This document shows, piece by piece, positions 29,087-64,000 of a stretch of DNA of 64,000 nt. Position 1 is the stretch's first letter; every line of letters begins with the position of its first letter. The DNA comes from Lytechinus pictus (lineage: Eukaryota), in contig NC_087246.1 of assembly GCF_037042905.1 (NCBI RefSeq), positions 2,728,001-2,792,000 of the forward strand, written 5' to 3'. Below the pieces are notes generated by a model. It saw only the letters and a program-made list of their open reading frames with translations. It had not been told where the DNA came from and did no database searches. Position numbers and translations under genes: made by a program.

Positions 29087-32034
29087 TTTATTAGATTCTA
29101 CAAAGCCCATTACACTGGGTGCTCTTTACAGACCCCCTAAAGATGATAAATTCATTGAATCACTCTCTGACACTTTAGAAAAATTTAAAAAAGATGAGGA
29201 AATTATAGTCTTAGGGGACATGAATATTTGCCTTTCGAAAAAGTCTCCCTTATCCCAGAAATATGAGAATATACTTAATCTAAGTGGTTTAAGCCAACTT
29301 GTAAAGCTGCCCACACGTACAACTCAGACATCTTCCTCCCTGATAGATCACATATTATGTAGTCAAGTAGAGCATATTAGTCAAAGTGGTGTTATTGACC
29401 TAGGTATAAGTGATCATTTATTAATTTATTGTTCAAGAAAGATTGTTAGGCCCGTATTTGGGCACCACTGAACTGTATCCATCAGGAGATTAAAAGGTTA
29501 TAATGTAGATGATTTCAACTTAAAGTTATCCCGATCAGACTGGTCCAAGGTAACTGAATATAACGATGTAAATATGGCTTGGGCAACTTTTAAATCTATA
29601 TTCTTATCAATTATAGATATAAGCGCACCTCTGAAAGAGGTAAGAATTAAGCAATCAACTGAAAAAGGATGAACCATGAAATTATTGTTTTAATTAAAGA
29701 GAGAAATGTAGCTTATAAAAGTATGAAAAGGAATATTGGCAATTTAGACCTTGAAAGAAAATATAAAGTTTTAAGGAATTTAGTTCAAAGGAAGGTAAGA
29801 AGTGCCAAAAACGAATACTTTTAAGAACAAATCGAAGAAAACAAACATGACTCTAGACAATTGTGGAAGAATTTGAAAGGTTTAGGTCTAAAAAGTAAAG
29901 GGAAATCTGATCAAAAAACGGTTATCAATGTGCAAGGTGAATTAAGTCATGATAAGGCTAATATTGCAAATGAGTTTAATCGTTACTTTACGACTGTGGC
30001 CGACAAGCTAGTTTGTAAATTACCAGTAAATACAAACAAATTTCATGCAGAAAGTGACCAATTTCAAAAGTTTTATGAAGAAAAGGGTATTTCAAAAGGT
30101 AGTTTTCACTTTTCCCCTGTTACAGAAAAATTTGTTTTAGGTGAACTAAATAAGTTGAAAATATCAAAAAGTACTGGTCTAGATATGATACCTGCAAGAT
30201 TTTTAAAAGATGGGGCAAGAAATTTGTACAAACCTTTGAATTATGTTATTAATTTATCTCTTATGTCTTCTACCTTTCCTGATGATATGAAATTTGCAAA
30301 AGTTACCCCGCTACATAAAAAGAAAGATAAAACTGACGTTAGTAATTATAGGCCTATAAGTGTATTAAGTGTAGTGTCAAAAATCTTGGAAAATCTGTTC
30401 ATGCTCAAGTGGAGAAATACTTTCAAGAAACCAAGCTAATATATAAATTTCAGTCCGGCTTTCGTAACGGATATTCCACTGAAACTTGTTTAATACATTT
30501 AACAGATTTTATCAGGAACGAAATTTCACATGGGCGCATGGTTGGAATGGTTCTCCTAGACTTACAAAAAGCCTTTGATACTGTAAATCATAACATACTT
30601 TTAAAGAAATTAGAAGTGATGGGTTTAGACTCTGCTTGTGTGACATGGTTTAGATCATATTTATCTAACCGTCATCAATATAGTTACCATGCAGACGGTT
30701 CTTTCTGATTCACTGCCTATTAAATGCGGAGTCCCTCAAGGAAGCATTTTAGGCCCCATTCTTTTTATGTCTTACATCAATGATATGTGTACTTGTATAA
30801 ACGAATCTAAATTAATTTTATATGCTGATGATAGTGTCTTGCTATATTCAGATACAAATCCCAAGATAATTGATAAAAAACTTAGTGCAGATCTGGCAAA
30901 TTGCATTGAATGGATGTCTGACAACAAGCTTAGTTTACACGTTGGGAAAACAGAAAGCATTTTGTTTTGTTCGAAACGAAAGTTAAGATATACACACGAT
31001 TTCAAGGTTTCATACAATAATCAGGTAATTGACAGAAAAGATTCAGTGAAATATTTGGGAATTAATTTAACAAGTAACCTATCATGGACGGGTTTGGTAG
31101 ACTCAATCGTCAAAAAGGCAAATTCACGCTTGAAATTTTTGTATAGATATCAAACCTGTTTGAATATGAAGTCTAGACGTATTTTATGCTTTGCTTTAAT
31201 ACAATGTCTATTCGACTATGCTAATGCGGCTTGGTACGGTAGTCTGGGTGTTACGGATAAGAAAAAGCTAAGAATAATTCAAAATAAAATTGTGAGATAC
31301 ATAAATGTTTTAGGACCAAGAGCACATGTCGGATGTAAAGAACTTGAAATGCAGGATTACTTCATGTAGATCACAGATCACAACAATTAGTATTACACCA
31401 CGTGCATAAAATATTCTATTCGGATACATTAGATCATTATATAGCAAATAATTGCACCCGTGTATCAAATATCCATAGGTACGGTACTCGAAATAGTAAT
31501 TTTAATTTTGTATTACCAAAACGTGAAGGACATATAGGGAACACTTTTTATTTTAATGGCATCCAATCTTGGAATGCTCTTCCCAATCAAGTAAAAGCAG
31601 TTAAAGTATTTTCTCAATTTAAGAGTGCATTAAAGAAGCACCTAAAACTGGAATCTACCCGAGAGCAATATAACCAGTAAAAATCACACATTTTGTACAG
31701 TTGGTTTCTAGTATTGTAGATAATGTAGGGTATGTTGAAATATAATCTTGTTTCATATATTAGGAGGATTGTTGTTTGCTTCAGATGTTTGCATATTATT
31801 TGACTGATGGATATGTATGTATGTATTTTATTATTTTTTTTTTAAACCACATTCCAGTACTTGTCGTAGTTTATACTTTTTGTTACAATATGTTAATGTT
31901 TTATACTAACTATAGGACCCCATTGGAAATAAGCCTTTCGGCTTTCATGTGCTATCCTGTCAAGGTATTCTTCAATTTTATTGTAATCTCTTGTGATATT
32001 CTTGACGAATAAAATCAATCAATCAATCAATCAA
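29087..32034 (+). mobile_element. 5'-truncated CR1/L2-group (Crack/Daphne-like) LINE; APE C-terminus plus RT, with frameshifts and stops
   Basis: ORF pieces encode LYRPP, LGDMNI, LIDHILC, ISDHLLIY (APE), NYRPISVL, FQSGFR, LDLQKAFDTVNH, GVPQGSILGP, LYADD (RT); ends AATAAA then (ATCA)n tail. Confidence 0.9.
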
Positions 32035-35822: not shown

Positions 35823-37460
35823 TACTTACTTACTGCCCGCTATGCCTCCATTGTCATGTAGGGCAGCAACGAATGTCCTCCACTTCTGTCGGTCCTGGGC
35901 CAAGATCTGTACAGTTCTCCAGGAGTGCCTTAGGTTTTTTAGTTCTCCCTCTACTGTTCTGCGCCATGTGATCTTGGGCCACCCCTTTTTCTTCTCCCTT
36001 CAGGGGTCCAGTGGAGAGCTACATGGTCCAATCCATTTCCATCGTCTTCTGAGGATTACGGTTCCCATGTTCTCTTGTTTACATCGCGTAAGTAGTTCTT
36101 CATTTGTGATTTTATTTGGCCAGAAAATTTGAAGAACTTTTCTGAGGCTTTTTGTATGAAAGACTGACAGTTTATGGAGGTCTTTCTCCGTCATTCTCCA
36201 GCACTCAGATCCATATAGTAGGGTGGAGAGGACACAGCTTTGTTATTGTGCTATACTACTGCTTTATTCAGACGGTTTCTGATGTCATTTTCTGCCCCAC
36301 CATCACTTGTGACAACGCTACTTGAACATTTTTCCCATTCACTTGTATTGGTAACGGATTTGTGTTATTCAATGTCATTATCTCTGTTTTGTTTTCGTTG
36401 ATTTTAAGGCCAACTTGTTGGGCATATTCACTCAGCCGTGTCGTCTTTGTTTGCATATGCTGGTGTGTATGTGAAAATAAGGCAAGATCATCGGCATAGT
36501 CGAGGTCTTCCAGGGTGGAAAATATGGACCATCTGATACCTCTCTGGTGATCTTCGGTAGTTCTTCTCATTACCCAGTCAATGGTGATTATGAAGAGGAT
36601 TGCAGACATGACACATCCCTGTCTAACTCCTGATTTTACTTCAAATTTTATGTCACTATTTCCCACGTTGCATGTAAAGTTAGAGTAAAAGCTCTTAATA
36701 ATTTGGACAATGTCCTTTGGTATCCTATATATGAACGAAGTATTCGCCACAAGCTCTGTCTATGGATGCTGTCGAATGCCTTGTCAAAATCGACAAAGTT
36801 GATATACATTTGTCTCTGCCATTCTGTGCATTGTTCTATGATGTTACGCAGTGAGAATATATTTTGATCTATGCATCCTCTTCCTCTGCGGAATCCTGCT
36901 TGCTCTTCTCTGAGATGCTGGTCTACTACACTTATAGGGTTCACAATTATCTTCGAAAAAATCTTACTAGGAATCGATAAGAGGGTGATTCCACGCCAGT
37001 TATCATGGTTATTGCAGTTTCTCAGGTTCCCTTTCTTTGGAATTTTGACAATACCTTGTGACCAGTCATCTGGAATTTGTTTTTTACTCCACACTGTTTT
37101 AAATAGTGGTTCGAAAATTTCTGCTGCAGCCTCTGGGTGTGCTTTGGATAATTCTGCGTTTAAGTTGCCATGTCCAGGAGATTTACCATTTCTCAAAGAT
37201 TTAATGGCAGATACTATTTCCCATTTAGATGGAGGGTCAATGTTTATGTTGAGATCCTCTTCTGCCTCTTGGATGTCTGCATCGGTTAATGATGGCGGTC
37301 TATTCAGTACTTCACTGAAATGCTCTGCCCATCTAGCATCTATTTCTGCTTCTGTTGTAAGAATATTTCCTTGTTTACTAAGAATTGGTGCATCTGTTGC
37401 TCCTTTGTTCCTTCCACTGATTATATTGGTAAGTTTATACACTTTTCTTTGTTCTTTATT
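35823..37460 (-). mobile_element. 5'-truncated RTE-clade LINE, frameshifted
   Basis: NWRGITLLSIPSK, QAGFRRGRGCIDQ, FVDFDKAFDSI, SGVRQGCVMS, LEDLDYADDLAL; 3' end GTTGCTGCCCTACATG...GGGCAG followed by (TAAG)n. Confidence 0.9.
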
Positions 37461-48822: not shown

Positions 48823-51800
48823 CTTGAATAAAATATACAAATAATGAACTAGGTAAGTAATGATATAATAGACATTCATACATTTCATCTAGATGTATCA
48901 ACCTTAATAAGTTGATCAATGCCCTCCAATATCCATCTGGCTTATCTATGTGACCTATTTTAATAATTGATAATCATCCCTTCTTATGAAATTGAGATAA
49001 GATTTTTGTTTAAAACCAATTTACGCTCAGATATATAGGTCTATCAATACTTGCTTCATTGTAGATTTTATTTCAATTAGAAATAGAGTAACACAGCATG
49101 TGTAATAATTTGTACCTCTGTTTTACAGGAGAAAGACTTTTTAAGCAAATTTACTTTCAGATGATCTTATAAGTATATGCAGTAGGATACTGATTTCACA
49201 TTCCTCAGAAGGGATTTAAGGTCATTGGTCTTCTGACTGCTTATTTTCAAGCATTCAAGCTTTCTTCTTCTTCCTGTTACTGCAGGCAAACTCCTCAATT
49301 GGGATATAATTGCTGCAGGCGTGTGTGGCTAGTGATGAATTTGAATTAATGGTGTGCCCCCCGGATGAAAGTAGACATTTGAATTTTGTTTAGCCTTGTC
49401 TTAAAACCATCGACCGATTTAGCTTCACGTATGTCTACTGGTAGCAGATTCCATTCTGCCATAGTCCTCAGAAGGAAGGAGTACTTGAAGCAATCTTTTT
49501 TTGTTGTTGGTCGGGAGAAAGAGATTGACGATGATTTCCGTGTCCTGACAGAATTTTGAGAGGGAGTTGTTAAGTATCGACCTACGTTGATTGAAGCACT
49601 GTGATTTACAGATTTATATAAAAGTGTAAGTCTTGAGATGGCTCTTCTATCTTCGAGAGATTTCCATTCAAGTGACTTCAGCATCTGGGAAACACTACTG
49701 GTTCTCCTGTGATCTTTACAGACGAATCTAGCTGCTCTTCGTTGAACTGCTTCTAGTCTACTGATCTGGTCTTTCGTGTATGGGTCCCACACAGAAGCAC
49801 AGTACTCCAACTTTGGACGTACTAACACTTTATAGGCTGTTTCTTTTACATTACGGGGGCAACTATACAAGTTTCTTCGAAGGAGGCCTAAAACCCTATT
49901 CGCTTTGAATATGGTAGTATTAACATGATCCGACCAGGTTAATTTGCTATTTATCTCGACACCTAAGTAATTGTGACTTGTGACAACGTTTAGTCGTTTC
50001 CCATTCATATCATAGGTGGTTAGAAGGGGTTTCCTTTTATGAGTGACGTGCATGACATGACACTTATCGGTGTTAAATCTCATTTGCCATGTAGCTTCCC
50101 AGTTACACAGGGTATTTATGTCCTGTTGTAGAACTTTCCCATCATCCTGTGATTTTATCTCACGGTAAAGTATACAGTCATCTGCAAACAGTCGAACATG
50201 TGACTGTATATCTTTGGGAAGATCGTTGACGTACAGTAAGAATAGCAAAGGCCCTAAAACTGTACCTTGAGGGACGCCCGATCTTACAGGAACAGAGGCT
50301 GATGCTTCGCCTTCTAGTACTACCCTCTGAGACCGTTTAGTAAGGAAGTTTCTTATCCATATTTGGAGGGGTCCTGTGATGCCTGATTGGTTCAGCTTTA
50401 GAAGAAGTCTCTGGTGAGGGACGGTGTCAAAGGCCTTGCTGAAGTCAGTTATGATAACATCTACTTGGCCCTGGTGATTCAAAGTCTCGGCCAGGTCGTT
50501 GACAGTTTCAGCAAGTTGGGTTTCACAGGAGTGACCTTTCCGGAAGCCATGTTGTTCTTTATTTAATATCCCATGTTTCTCGAGGTGATTCATAATGTTT
50601 GAGTGGATGATATGTTCTAACAATTTACATGGAATAGACGTCAACGAAACAGGTCTATAGTTGCTAGCTTCGGAGCGATCCCTCTTTTTGAATATGGGAG
50701 AGATATTTGCCCTTAACCAGTCCTCAGGAAGTTCTCCAGTATCTATTGACTTTTGGTAGATCTGTTGTAAAATTGGAGCAATGCTGTCTGCACATTCCTT
50801 TAGAACTGATGGTAGGATTCCATCTGGGCCTGGTGCCTTTTGTGGTTTAAGTTCTTTCAAGAGTTTTACAATTCCCTGGCTTGTTATCACAATTTGACTG
50901 ATACATGTAGATGGACAAGAAGAAGTTATATGTGTAGGTAGGTTGTGACAGTCCTCTTGAGTGAACACAGACTCGAACTGGCAGTTGAGGACATTTGCCC
51001 TGTCCTGCGGAGTTACGGCAATACTTCTTGAAGTGTTCAGAGAGGCTACTCCAGTAGAACACTGTCTTAAGCTCTTTATGAATTTCCAGAAGGACTTCTT
51101 GTTTTCTGTAGTTAAATTTTTCCCCATATCATGTAGATACACACTGCGTGCTTTCACATTCCTCAGAAGGGATTTAAGGTCATTGGTCTTCTGACTGCTT
51201 ATTTTCAAGCATTCAAGCTTTCCTTCTTATAAGGTAATATTGAGTTGCAAGATGATGTATTGTTCCAGTGAAATAAGATAAGAGCTTTGCAAGAATACAT
51301 GTTATATTTCATGAAAGTTGATATATAACCCCTATTCCTTTATGAGATGAAAACTATAAACAGCACCTACTGCAGAGCAACCTGGAGATTAGATCTGAAT
51401 GCACGAAAAATATAAACACATGATTGCACTTGCACGATTGCTCTCAAACTACAATTTGACTTAAAAACAGAACTTTAATTATTTACAGTATAATTCAATA
51501 AAAATACAATACCTAGGTGGTAATTTCATATTTTTTGTACAAGCTTAGAGGGAAAAGTGGGGCCCTCACCAGCCAAACCCACCGCCCCCCCCCCCCCAGC
51601 TCTGTGGCTCATGCAAAGGGCAAAATAGAAGACCAGAGACACACACACACATATAAAGTAAAAGATATTCCAAATGGAGAGAAGAGGAGATATATCTGAT
51701 GTATCAGTACCTGTATCATATTCCAAATCATCAGGGTATCTTGTTGAATGAGATGCTGAACATAAACCTTTTTCTCTTGATCCCGGGAGAAAGCAGTACG

Positions 51801-62404: not shown

Positions 62405-62946
62405 TGACAAAGGTGGGATTTATGGGGGGGGGGAATATAAAATTCATGCAACATCACGATCTTTAAAAACAATTAAAACTAATATTCTTACTTTACACAA
62501 AGTTTCACTTCTTTTCCATTCTATCAGTCTCAAAATTGGTGATTTAGAGCCGACATGGAGTTCCTCACACGTATTAATAATTCGCTGACGATTTCAAAAC
62601 ATTGCATGCGCGGGGGTTAAGCTCTGACCTCAAAAAAATGAAAAGTTCTGTTGCGATACCTCTCCTTTTAAAATTCAAAACAAAATGGCCGATCGAGACC
62701 GAGATTATTTTTTTTTAGAGGTTCCAGTCTGTGCCTCGATGTCAGGATTTGTGTGTCACGATAGACCTTCATCGTTCATCCAAGTAATCGCGGTAAGTGC
62801 ATAATTCCTGTTTCCACATTTTATTAAGATTACTATTGAGACCCAAATCTACCCCAGTGTCTCCCTCGTTTTGCACGGTCGACTCCTGGGCTCCGACCCG
62901 CTTCGCGGGCCGAGCTCCCTGGCCTTGGTTAGGTTAAGGTCGAACG

Positions 62947-63002
62947 TAACCCATGGCGCTCCCGCCCGGGCAGCGCAGGGCGTTCGGGAGCTCCCTGGGT
63001 TA
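62947..63002. mobile_element. 56-bp minimal TIR element (A) flanked by the 9-bp repeat GGTCGAACG
   Basis: TAACCCATGGCGCTCCCG ... CGGGAGCTCCCTGGGTTA (18-bp TIR, 2 mismatches). Confidence 0.7.
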
Positions 63003-63011
63003 GGTCGAACG

Positions 63012-63466
63012 TAGACCAAAAGCTTCAGTCTCTGTTATGTTGGTCGTTCAGCTGAACTCCGTTGGCTTCACTCACCAAATACAGAGACCGAAGTTCTAGC
63101 GCGATCTGTACAGGGGACTCACTGGCCATATGTTTATGTACTTAAGAGAGCTGAGAGGATAAAACGGGGAAGTGAATTTGCGCGACAGCCAAGGTAAGTC
63201 ACTGTTTTTGTTCCTTTTAACTTGATTTTTCTCTGTTTTTTGGCAATTAATGCCAAGAGGGAATATTAATTTGCATTTTGGTCGCGTTAATTTTCAAAAA
63301 TTTTATTCATTAAAGACAAAAATTGAAGAGCCCCGACGGGGGGATTTTGCATTGCAAGTCCCCTAATGGTGGCTGCACGCTAGCGAGCCGTCTGTGTATG
63401 AGGAGAAATAAAAAAAATTAAAAAATGTTTAAAAACTCCTCGAAACAGACGGCTGCCAGCTGTCTA
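63012..63466 (+). mobile_element. Non-autonomous TAG...CTA element (B), AcademH-like, flanked by the 9-bp repeat
   Basis: TAGAC...GTCTA termini; separate subterminal hairpin at each end; GGTCGAACG on both sides. Confidence 0.75.
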
Positions 63467-63475
63467 GGTCGAACG

Positions 63476-63920
63476 TAGACAGCTGGCAGCCGTCTGTTTT
63501 GAGGAGTTTTTTAACATTTTTTTTTTTAAAGTTCTCCTCATACACAGACGGCTCGCTAGCGTGCAGCCACCATTAGGGGACTTGCAATGCAAAATCCCCC
63601 CGTCGGGGCTCTTCAATTTTTGTCTTTAATCAATAAACATTTTGAAAATTAATGCGACCAAAATGCAAATTGATATTCCCTCTTGGCATTAATTGCCAAG
63701 AAACGGTGAAAAATCGAGTTAAAAGGAACAAAAACAGTGACTTACCTCGGCTGTCGCGCAAATTCACTTCCCCGTTTTATCCGATCTTAAGTACATAAAC
63801 ATATGGCCATTGAGTCCCCTGTACAGATCGCGCTAGAACTTCGGTCTCTGTATTTGGTGAGTGAAGCCAACGGAGTTCAGCTGAACAACCAACATAACAG
63901 AGACCGAAGCTTTTGGTCTA
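63476..63920 (-). mobile_element. Second, inverted and slightly diverged copy of element B (B')
   Basis: Reverse complement of 63012-63466 with scattered substitutions and indels; GGTCGAACG on both sides. Confidence 0.75.
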
Positions 63921-64000
63921 GGTCGAACGTTGCGTTGCTTTTGCCGCGCCGAAAAATCTCCCAAAAAGTTCCGTCTCCTTGCCTGATTTGAGCAACAGAA

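What the first reader, a model, noticed from the sequence alone, without database searches (positions are those of the whole stretch)
62938..63929. Repeat-spacer-like transposon stack: one 9-mer (GGTCGAACG) repeated four times, separating three TA-terminated elements
Seen directly: GGTCGAACG occurs in the same orientation at 62938-46, 63003-11, 63467-75 and 63921-29. Between the copies lie element A (56 bp, TAACC...GGTTA), element B (455 bp, TAGAC...GTCTA) and an inverted, diverged copy B' (445 bp). The 9-mer keeps its orientation while B flips, so it belongs to the target site and not to the element. Inference: each new insertion landed exactly next to a previous element end and re-duplicated the same 9 bp. 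This builds an array with the logic of CRISPR spacer acquisition (one new repeat per insertion) and may record insertion history. From memory, TAG..CTA termini with 9-bp TSDs and tandem insertion are reported for AcademH-type elements, so the family may be known; the end-guided retargeting mechanism is the point to follow up. A possible degenerate fourth unit lies at 62877-62937 (GGTCGAC...GAGCTCCCTGG).
Basis: partly seen in the sequence, partly recalled or inferred. Interest (0 to 1): 0.85.

Follow-up and report, generated by a model that had tools for sequence, protein, structure and literature searches.

The report
Transposons stacked in one target site
Three small jumping genes landed one after another in exactly the same 9-base target, each copying it once more; this happens often in this genome, mostly for a reason already known from the fruit-fly P element, so it is a clear example and not a new mechanism.

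Summary
GGTCGAACG occurs four times on one strand (0.06 expected) and separates A (56 bp), B (455 bp) and B' (445 bp, inverted). B is a young non-autonomous DNA transposon with about 3,800 copies, TAGAC...GTCTA ends and locus-specific 9-bp target duplications, so the 9-mer is target sequence. B and B' are independent insertions. Stacking is recurrent: 43 of 67 B-B junctions within 30 bp lie exactly 9 bp apart, in both direct and inverted arrangements, with the same 9-mer at every position. A-B (12/25) and A-A (3/6) junctions behave alike. A special end-guided mechanism is largely unnecessary. B prefers a palindromic target, GCWN|GGNNNNNCC|NWGC, and its own ...TCTA end restores part of the flank, so each insertion leaves two good targets. 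A motif built from solo sites predicts 38-53% reuse of the same 9 bp; 64% is observed. Both principles are published for the P element. One point stays open: stacked 9-mers match the motif no better than solo ones, and new copies cluster within about 100 bp of resident copies. AcademH membership could not be tested. Other first-stage notes (s1-317572, s1-317579) reported such stacks elsewhere in this genome.

The parts
62627..62936 (+). Remnant (3' arm) of an old, long A-type element. Its end lies 1-6 bp before the stack.
   Evidence: About 70% identity to the ~210-bp terminal arms of 614-bp and 529-bp A-type elements. The alignment shows that GCACGGTCGACTCCTGGG is family sequence.
62938..62946 (+). 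Copy 1 of the 9-bp target GGTCGAACG
62947..63002 (.). Element A: a 56-bp palindromic micro-element with TAACCC...GGGTTA ends, a deletion derivative of the long A-type family
   Evidence: At least 62 similar elements of 42-66 bp with perfect 16-bp ends. Long relatives have their own 9-bp TSDs. Aligned to the family.
63003..63011 (+). Copy 2 of GGTCGAACG
63012..63466 (+). Element B: a non-autonomous DNA transposon with TAGAC...GTCTA ends, 2.7% from the family consensus
   Evidence: 2,166 first-look candidates, best copies 93-98% identical. Perfect locus-specific 9-bp TSDs. Divergence.
63467..63475 (+). Copy 3 of GGTCGAACG, between the two 3' ends (tail-to-tail junction)
63476..63920 (-). Element B': a second, independent B copy in inverted orientation, 2.7% from the consensus
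   Evidence: It shares only one non-consensus base with B, and that base is a common family variant (22 of 67 copies).
63921..63929 (+). Copy 4 of GGTCGAACG, followed by unique flank TTGCGTTG

Best explanation
This is a stack made by repeated, independent insertion of non-autonomous cut-and-paste DNA transposons into one staggered-cut target. Families A and B both make 9-bp target-site duplications. The transposase that moves B prefers a 17-bp palindromic target, G C W N | G G N N N N N C C | N W G C. Insertion keeps the 9-bp core on both sides and keeps one selected flank. The element's own terminus (...T-C-T-A) puts C at -3 and A/T at -2 back in place. Each insertion therefore leaves two sites that are again good targets, and the next element that lands nearby usually takes exactly the same 9 bp and duplicates it once more. 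Shown here: the locus-specific TSDs, the independence of B and B', the genome-wide spike at a 9-bp gap in all orientations, the motif, and its predictive power. Inferred: that a single transposase, or closely related ones, act on A and B, and that the motif reflects transposase-DNA contacts. A second component favours insertion within about 100 bp of resident copies independently of the motif. It is seen but not explained.
For: TSDs differ at every locus and are perfect in 67 of 83 full-length copies. B-B junction gaps: direct 17 of 34 at 9 bp, tail-to-tail 6 of 9, head-to-head 20 of 29. All three positions of inverted pairs carry the same 9-mer, and stacks reach four 9-mers or more. B and B' share 1 non-consensus base against 18 and 14 private ones. 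Partners at the same locus are no closer than random pairs, 4.1% against 3.6%. Target motif from an unselected sample: G(-4) 66%, C(-3) 76%, W(-2) 86%, G(+1) 56%. The leave-one-out motif predicts 53% of nearby second insertions at the same 9 bp. A conservative motif without TA-ending flanks predicts 38%. Observed is 43 of 67, or 64%. Regenerated sites score a mean likelihood ratio of 161 against a background of 0.88, and the window's empty site scores 143, top 0.07%. B also inserts at gap 3-4 inside A ends (CTG|GGTTA), where the motif predicts a half-site. Precedents are PMC2577343 and PMC5932611.
Against: The motif under-predicts the spike, with a residual odds factor of about 1.7-3. Stacked 9-mers match the motif no better than solo TSDs: core score 1.91 +/- 0.41 against 1.32, and G(+1) 0.61 against 0.56. 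A genome-wide motif-proportional model predicts 3.6 and 0.84. Pairs within 10-61 bp are about 55-fold over random, while kb-scale clustering is only about 5-fold. The motif rests on only 25 sites and assumes independent positions. A's own target motif was not measured.
Confidence: 0.72

Rival explanations
1. Active end-guided targeting. Transposase bound to the end of a resident copy tethers the incoming transposition complex. New copies are recruited to resident ends, and the local motif only fine-tunes the position.
For: Stacked 9-mers are no better motif matches than solo ones, which fits a motif-blind draw. Head-to-head pair density is about 55-fold over random within 61 bp and falls about 4-fold by 150-180 bp. 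A residual excess of 1.7-3-fold in odds remains at the exact position.
Against: Density is flat from 10 to 61 bp, with no gradient towards the end. The motif alone predicts 38-53% reuse. Flanks of resident copies are about 6-fold richer in good motif sites than background, and micro-hotspots of about 100 bp would give the same pattern. Stacks also join families with different termini (A with B), which requires cross-recognition of ends.
Confidence: 0.2
2. Local rearrangement and not insertion. Candidates are unequal crossing-over between TSDs, rolling-circle concatemers, or palindrome formation that duplicated a resident B.
For: Direct tandems with one TSD in the junction can arise by unequal exchange. 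One B-26 bp-B composite is present at 6 loci, so some dimers do propagate as units.
Against: B' is inverted. B and B' share only one common-variant base and each is 2.7% from the consensus. A is a different family. 26 inverted pairs at other loci have the same layout. The flanks are not palindromic.
Confidence: 0.03
3. The 9-mer belongs to the elements, or it is a fixed sequence-specific target as for Dada or R1, or the array is an assembly artefact.
For: None beyond the local repetition.
Against: None of the other loci examined has GGTCGAACG at a B end. No tRNA or small-RNA gene is present; there are only sub-threshold hairpin matches. The same architecture, each time with a different 9-mer, occurs at more than 50 loci. 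A contig from another individual shows a B-9 nt-B junction.
Confidence: 0.02

Closest known systems
P-element staggered-cut palindromic target motif, restored by the terminal nucleotides of the inverted repeats (Linheiro and Bergman 2008, PMC2577343)
   Same: The palindromic motif extends beyond the TSD. The strongest positions lie just outside the TSD. The element's terminal 3 nt put back the flank of the motif after insertion. Orientation is random.
   Different: The TSD is 9 bp, not 8, and the motif spans 17 bp, not 14. Only C(-3) and W(-2) are restored, while G(-4) is not. In P, hotspots match the motif better than single-hit sites, and that was not seen here.
TE double insertion giving tandem dimers with the TSD in the junction (McGurk and Barbash 2018, PMC5932611)
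   Same: The junction holds exactly one TSD-length copy of the target. The explanation is that an insertion preserves its target while creating a new one. Dimers form during bursts of a young family.
   Different: Here inverted pairs (26) are at least as common as direct ones (17), stacks reach three or more elements and mix families, and the data come from a fixed reference genome of an echinoderm, not from population data.
[quoted passage not shown] 2016, PMC4779613) and CRISPR spacer acquisition
   Same: One new repeat is added per integration, and the repeat is duplicated target sequence.
   Different: There is no polarity, no leader, no fixed repeat sequence across loci, and no evidence of any use of the array. 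The enzyme here is inferred to be a cut-and-paste DDE-type transposase and not Cas1.
AcademH DNA transposons (Kojima 2020; TSD length as cited in PMC10045372)
   Same: 9-bp TSDs. The genome holds multi-copy RecQ-like helicase frames.
   Different: No autonomous copy with TAGAC ends was retrieved. Mutator-like elements also make 9-bp TSDs. The defining paper is not held in the library.
Bacterial IS elements that target their own inverted repeats (for example IS30 and IS911; from my own knowledge, not checked here)
   Same: New copies insert at or next to the ends of resident copies.
   Different: Those cases involve demonstrated transposase binding to the resident end. Here that is only the rival hypothesis.

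Membership tests
Non-autonomous DNA transposon (MITE-like) | Fixed termini with inverted repeats, a constant-length TSD that differs between loci, high copy number, no coding capacity | tested here: met
   B has TAGAC...GTCTA ends, a 9-bp TSD perfect in 67 of 83 copies, about 3,800 anchored 5' ends and no ORF of note. A has 16-bp or longer TIRs, and long relatives have 9-bp TSDs.
Double insertion at one target site (McGurk and Barbash model) | The junction between elements holds exactly one TSD-length copy of the target, identical to the outer TSDs | tested here: met
   Window: four identical 9-mers. Other loci.
Double insertion at one target site (McGurk and Barbash model) | The partners are independent transposition events | tested here: met
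   B and B' share 1 common-variant base against 18 and 14 private differences. Same-locus pairs are no closer than random pairs.
Double insertion at one target site (McGurk and Barbash model) | Multiply hit sites match the preferred motif better than singly hit sites | tested here: not met
   Core score 1.91 +/- 0.41 against 1.32, and G(+1) 0.61 against 0.56. The predicted values were 3.6 and 0.84. Sample sizes are small (40 stacks, 24 solo sites).
Staggered-cut palindromic target motif restored by element termini (P-element model) | A palindromic motif extends beyond the TSD | tested here: met
   GCWN|GGNNNNNCC|NWGC, 6.5 bits in total, strongest at -4 and -3.
Staggered-cut palindromic target motif restored by element termini (P-element model) | The terminal nucleotides of the element recreate the motif flank | tested here: met
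   Both B ends read ...TCTA next to the TSD, giving C at -3 and T at -2, although -4 is T and not G. Regenerated sites score a mean likelihood ratio of 161.
AcademH superfamily | TSD of 9 or 10 bp | tested here: met
   9 bp. The TSD range is as cited in PMC10045372.
AcademH superfamily | An autonomous copy with the same termini that encodes an Academ-type transposase plus a helicase | not testable with these tools
RecQ-like multi-copy frames exist but are not linked to TAGAC ends. Scan notes s1-324989 and s1-317485 are unchecked leads.
CRISPR-like chronological array | Polarised addition at one end, so that order records history | tested here: not met
   All four junctions keep likelihood ratios of 32-1,151 as targets. 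Orientation classes of 17 direct, 6 tail-to-tail and 20 head-to-head are compatible with random orientation.
Sequence-specific transposon (Dada or R1 type) | The same target sequence at all copies | tested here: not met
   Every locus has a different 9-mer. No small-RNA gene lies at the site.

The most novel reading that the evidence does not exclude
Resident element ends actively recruit incoming copies. Transposase tethering within about 100 bp would make this family build stacks by a eukaryotic counterpart of bacterial IS end-targeting, with the sequence motif only setting the final position.
Probability: 0.2. Interest if true: 0.6.

Novelty: new member of a known kind. Interest (0 to 1): 0.3.

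Why it matters
The locus is a clear natural example, outside Drosophila, of two published principles working together: element ends that rebuild their own target motif, and repeated insertion at one site. It occurs at high frequency, in both orientations and across families. Such stacks are the proposed raw material for transposon-derived satellites. The inverted pairs form hairpin-prone structures of about 450 bp. The unexplained short-range clustering gives a concrete, testable question about how this poorly known group of elements with 9-bp TSDs chooses its targets.

Tried and rejected
(1) A four-unit reconstruction of the empty site (likelihood ratio 1,654) is withdrawn. One search shows that the supposed left flank TTTGCAC and the GGTCGAC are sequence of the long A-type family.

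(2) Third occurrences of the TSD in L009 and L007 are chance. One lies in low-complexity sequence and the other has no TA ends. That leaves 1 confirmed stack (L017) in the sample of 27 loci that were not chosen for their context.

(3) L002 and L065 share a TSD but only 14-23 bp of flank. They are not paralogous segments, so they do not show an intermediate state.

(4) The RecQ_Zn_bind search (PF16124) found only 2 loci. TIGR00614 found multi-copy RecQ-like frames, but their DNA could not be cut out to check the termini.

(5) Read laying on four runs was inconclusive. Short-read contigs from thousands of other copies swamp the locus and the table is truncated, so no allele with fewer units could be sought.

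(6) The AcademH paper is not held under its DOI or its PMC id.

(7) Rfam matches at 63357-63582 are all below the gathering scores. They are generic hairpin hits to the B/B' inverted repeat.

(8) A genome-wide model in which stacks form in proportion to motif score is rejected.

Full report
**Observation**

The sequence is as described. GGTCGAACG occurs four times in the 64-kb window, all on the + strand, at 62938, 63003, 63467 and 63921. The chance expectation is 0.06, and none of 100 shuffles reached four. Between the copies lie three elements:
- A, 62947-63002, 56 bp, TAACC...GGTTA;
- B, 63012-63466, 455 bp, TAGAC...GTCTA;
- B', 63476-63920, 445 bp, the reverse complement of B at 93.4% identity.

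No other copy of A or B lies in the window.

**What B is**

The window comes from an 812-Mb genome (C2:2,728,001-2,792,000). Unchecked scan notes call it the sea urchin Lytechinus pictus. B is a high-copy element of about 448 bp. The first look found 2,166 candidates, and the best 40 are 93-98% identical. About 3,800 5' ends carry the 11-nt anchor TAGACCAAAAG (4,331 hits against 508 control hits).

In the fetched loci every copy is flanked by a perfect 9-bp direct repeat that differs from locus to locus. Of 83 non-redundant full-length copies, 67 have perfect TSDs. None of the other loci examined has GGTCGAACG.

The family is young, with a median of 1.8% divergence from the majority consensus of 67 copies. 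B has only 5-bp terminal inverted repeats and no gene.

**What A is**

A belongs to a family of palindromic micro-elements. At least 62 copies of 42-66 bp have perfect 16-bp ends. They are the joined termini of longer elements of 529-614 bp with inverted arms of about 210 bp. Those long elements have 9-bp TSDs of their own: GTGGAAATG and GCTCCATAT are perfect, and one more matches at 8 of 9.

**Independent insertions**

B and B' are each 2.7% from the consensus. They share a single non-consensus base, which is itself a common variant (22 of 67 copies), against 18 and 14 private differences. Across 14 pairs found at one locus, partners are no more alike than random pairs (4.1% against 3.6%). 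Together with the inversion of B' and the different family of A, this excludes unequal crossing-over, rolling-circle concatemers and palindrome formation for this locus.

**Recurrence**

I searched the genome for two B ends separated by 0-30 arbitrary bases, using exact 11-nt anchors.

| Arrangement | Junctions | At exactly 9 bp | Other gaps |
|---|---|---|---|
| Direct | 34 | 17 | one 26-bp composite present 6 times; 11 singles |
| Tail-to-tail | 9 loci | 6 | 5, 19, 23 |
| Head-to-head | 29 loci | 20 | 9 spread over 12-28 |

Counting the 26-bp composite once, 43 of 67 junctions (64%) are at exactly 9 bp. In the loci I fetched, inverted pairs carry the same 9-mer at all three positions. Stacks reach four copies of the 9-mer (L035: 455 + 840 + 447 bp), and several continue beyond the fetched DNA. 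Partners include other size classes (about 116, 195, 840, 1087 and 1435 bp), all with cta[TSD]tag junctions. The 840-bp family shares only B's first 82 bp.

- A-to-B junctions: 12 of 25 at 9 bp.
- A-A junctions: 3 of 6 at 9 bp.

The window's architecture is therefore one of more than 50 such loci. That, and the 5% difference between B and B', also argues against an assembly artefact.

**Mechanism: the exact position**

I built a target motif from the 25 perfect-TSD copies of the sample fetched. That sample was chosen by similarity to B and not by context. The motif is clearly palindromic: G at -4 (66%), C at -3 (76%), A or T at -2 (86%), G at TSD positions 1 and 2 (56% and 42%), and the mirror image on the other side. 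It carries 6.5 bits in all.

Both ends of B read ...TCTA next to the TSD. After insertion, the resident end therefore supplies C(-3) and W(-2), while the 9-bp core and the outer flank are retained.

I then asked where a second insertion within -9 to +21 bp of a resident end should land. The motif used for each copy was built with that copy's own site left out.

| Model or data | Share on exactly the same 9 bp |
|---|---|
| Leave-one-out motif | 53% (median 59%) |
| Conservative motif, all TA-ending flanks excluded | 38% |
| Observed | 64% |

The conservative motif guards against hidden neighbouring elements and is biased against the end mimic.

On an absolute scale the window background has a mean likelihood ratio of 0.88, and regenerated sites average 161 (median 25). 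The window's reconstructed empty site, taggttaa|GGTCGAACG|ttgcgttg, scores 143, in the top 0.07% of window positions. The four present junctions still score 32 to 1,151.

The motif also explains a second mode in A-to-B junctions. Five cases at gap 3-4 place B's TSD on CTG|GGTTA inside the A end.

This is the principle published for the P element. [quoted passage not shown] **What the motif does not explain**

1. The observed spike exceeds the prediction by a factor of about 1.7-3 in odds.

2. If stacks formed in proportion to motif quality across the genome, stacked 9-mers should be much better motif matches than solo TSDs. The predicted core score is 3.6 (95% interval 2.4-4.4) and the predicted G at +1 is 0.84. 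Observed values are 1.91 +/- 0.41 and 0.61, close to the solo values of 1.32 and 0.56.

3. A two-step model fits. In it something first draws a second insertion to the neighbourhood, and the motif then picks the position locally. It predicts a core score of 1.6-2.2 and G(+1) of 0.59-0.67.

4. Head-to-head pair density per gap length:

| Gap | Pairs per gap length | Call |
|---|---|---|
| exactly 9 | 20 | 10 |
| other gaps 0-30 | 0.30 | 10 |
| 31-61 | 0.23 | 32 |
| 150-180 | 0.065 | 52 |
| random placement | 0.0045 | computed from 31 |

For comparison, among the first 100 anchor positions printed for C1, 12 of 99 neighbour distances are under 3 kb, against 1.8 expected. That is my hand count, and it corresponds to kb-scale clustering of only about 5-fold.

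There is thus a motif-independent draw with a range of about 100 bp or less. It is flat between 10 and 61 bp and shows no gradient towards the end. Part of it may come from flanks that are about 6-fold richer in good motif sites than background. The rest could be tethering to transposase on resident ends or small accessible hotspots, and my data do not separate these. Local re-insertion of the resident copy itself is unlikely, because stack partners are not close relatives.

**The fourth unit**

Window 62627-62922 aligns at about 70% with the terminal arm of the long A-type elements. In the multiple alignment GCACGGTCGACTCCTGGGCTCC matches family sequence: GCACACTGAGCGTCTGGGCTCC in the 614-bp copies and ACACGGTAAGCTTCTGGGCTCC in the 529-bp copy.

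GGTCGAC at 62877 is therefore not a decayed copy of the 9-mer. The 'unit' is the end of an old long A-type element that stops 1-6 bp before the stack. I had briefly scored a four-unit empty site and I withdraw it.

**Superfamily**

The 9-bp TSD fits AcademH, whose TSDs are 9-10 bp according to PMC10045372. Mutator-like elements also make 9-bp TSDs (my own knowledge). The AcademH paper is not held.

The genome has multi-copy RecQ-like frames with a shared two-part layout, some carrying stops (C2:8.454 Mb, C5:27.21 Mb, C5:55.955 Mb, C18:16.255 Mb), and one intron-free 452-aa frame at C10:32.262 Mb. Scan notes mention helicase-carrying elements with TAGAC ends in this genome. These notes are unchecked leads.

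**Other checks**

- There is no tRNA or small-RNA gene at the target. The Rfam matches are sub-threshold hairpin hits on the B/B' junction.
- Short-read contigs from four runs could not resolve the locus. One contig from another individual shows a B 3' end, 9 other letters (ATTATTGAT) and a B 5' end, which is a stack at another locus.

**The CRISPR analogy**

The arithmetic of one new repeat per insertion is the same. However, orientation classes are compatible with random orientation, every junction remains a target, the repeat differs at every locus, and nothing suggests that the array is read. The order of elements therefore need not record the order of insertion.

**Verdict**

The finding is real and well resolved, and it is mostly explained by known principles. 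I rate it a new member of a known kind, with interest of about 0.3. The one open point worth following is the short-range, motif-independent clustering. Two first-stage notes on other DNA of this genome, s1-317572 and s1-317579, describe the same stacks and 'end-mimicking targets'. I reached both points from my own calls (8-10 and 25-27) before I read those notes.

Noticed in passing
window 49346-51208 (-), 36648-37442 (-), 30689-31369 (+): ORFs of 620, 264 and 226 aa with reverse-transcriptase domains (RVT_1, E = 2e-36, 6e-13 and 6e-15). These are retrotransposon copies or fragments.
   Followed up: partly
G000 C1:17778696, C8:34241806, C11:7071893, C13:5384588, C28:982001, C28:1132670: A B-26 bp-B direct composite with an identical or nearly identical 26-bp spacer (GATCTACAATGTAGATGTAGCATGAC) occurs at six loci. 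A dimer appears to have been moved or duplicated as one unit.
   Followed up: no
L003 (G000 C18:8205162-8208609) and L004 (C5:18884523-18887970): The two 3.4-kb loci are 99.9% identical over their whole length although they lie on different contigs. This is either a very recent segmental duplication or assembly redundancy.
   Followed up: no
G000 C2:8454203-8456615, C5:27209141-27211604, C5:55955091-55957430, C18:16255124-16256734, C10:32262302-32263228: Multi-copy RecQ-like helicase frames with the same two-part layout, some with stop codons, plus one intron-free 452-aa frame. They are candidates for helicase-carrying transposons, not linked to B here.
   Followed up: partly
G000 C3:42598920, C3:46498647, C12:2544340: Three A-to-B junctions have a 14-bp gap that reads as 9 nt followed by TAGTC or TAGCC. 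This may be a 5-bp remnant of another TAG-ended element, or an excision footprint, between the two elements.
   Followed up: no
window 63357-63582: The tail-to-tail B/B' pair draws sub-threshold matches to several miRNA-precursor models, simply because it is a long hairpin. If transcribed, the pair would fold into a hairpin of about 450 bp.
   Followed up: no
L032:665-1511, L035:672-1511, L079:1521-2359, L068:77-1511: A family of about 840 bp (one copy 1,435 bp) shares only the first 82 bp with B, ends in ...CCTGTCTA, and carries a 62-aa open frame (KRHEKYTLPMFNWVEHDKNG...) kept in three copies that are 98-99% identical. It was not searched against protein families.
   Followed up: no
G000 C15:30588339-30588362: A 24-bp sequence, TAACCCAGGGAGCTCCCTGGGTTA, is the smallest A-type unit seen. 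It consists of nothing but two abutting termini.
   Followed up: no
L017 (G000 C1:12691267-12694714), locus positions 869-1957: A stack of at least three elements on the 9-mer GCTCCATAT: an element ending in CTA, then a 614-bp A-type element, then B.
   Followed up: partly
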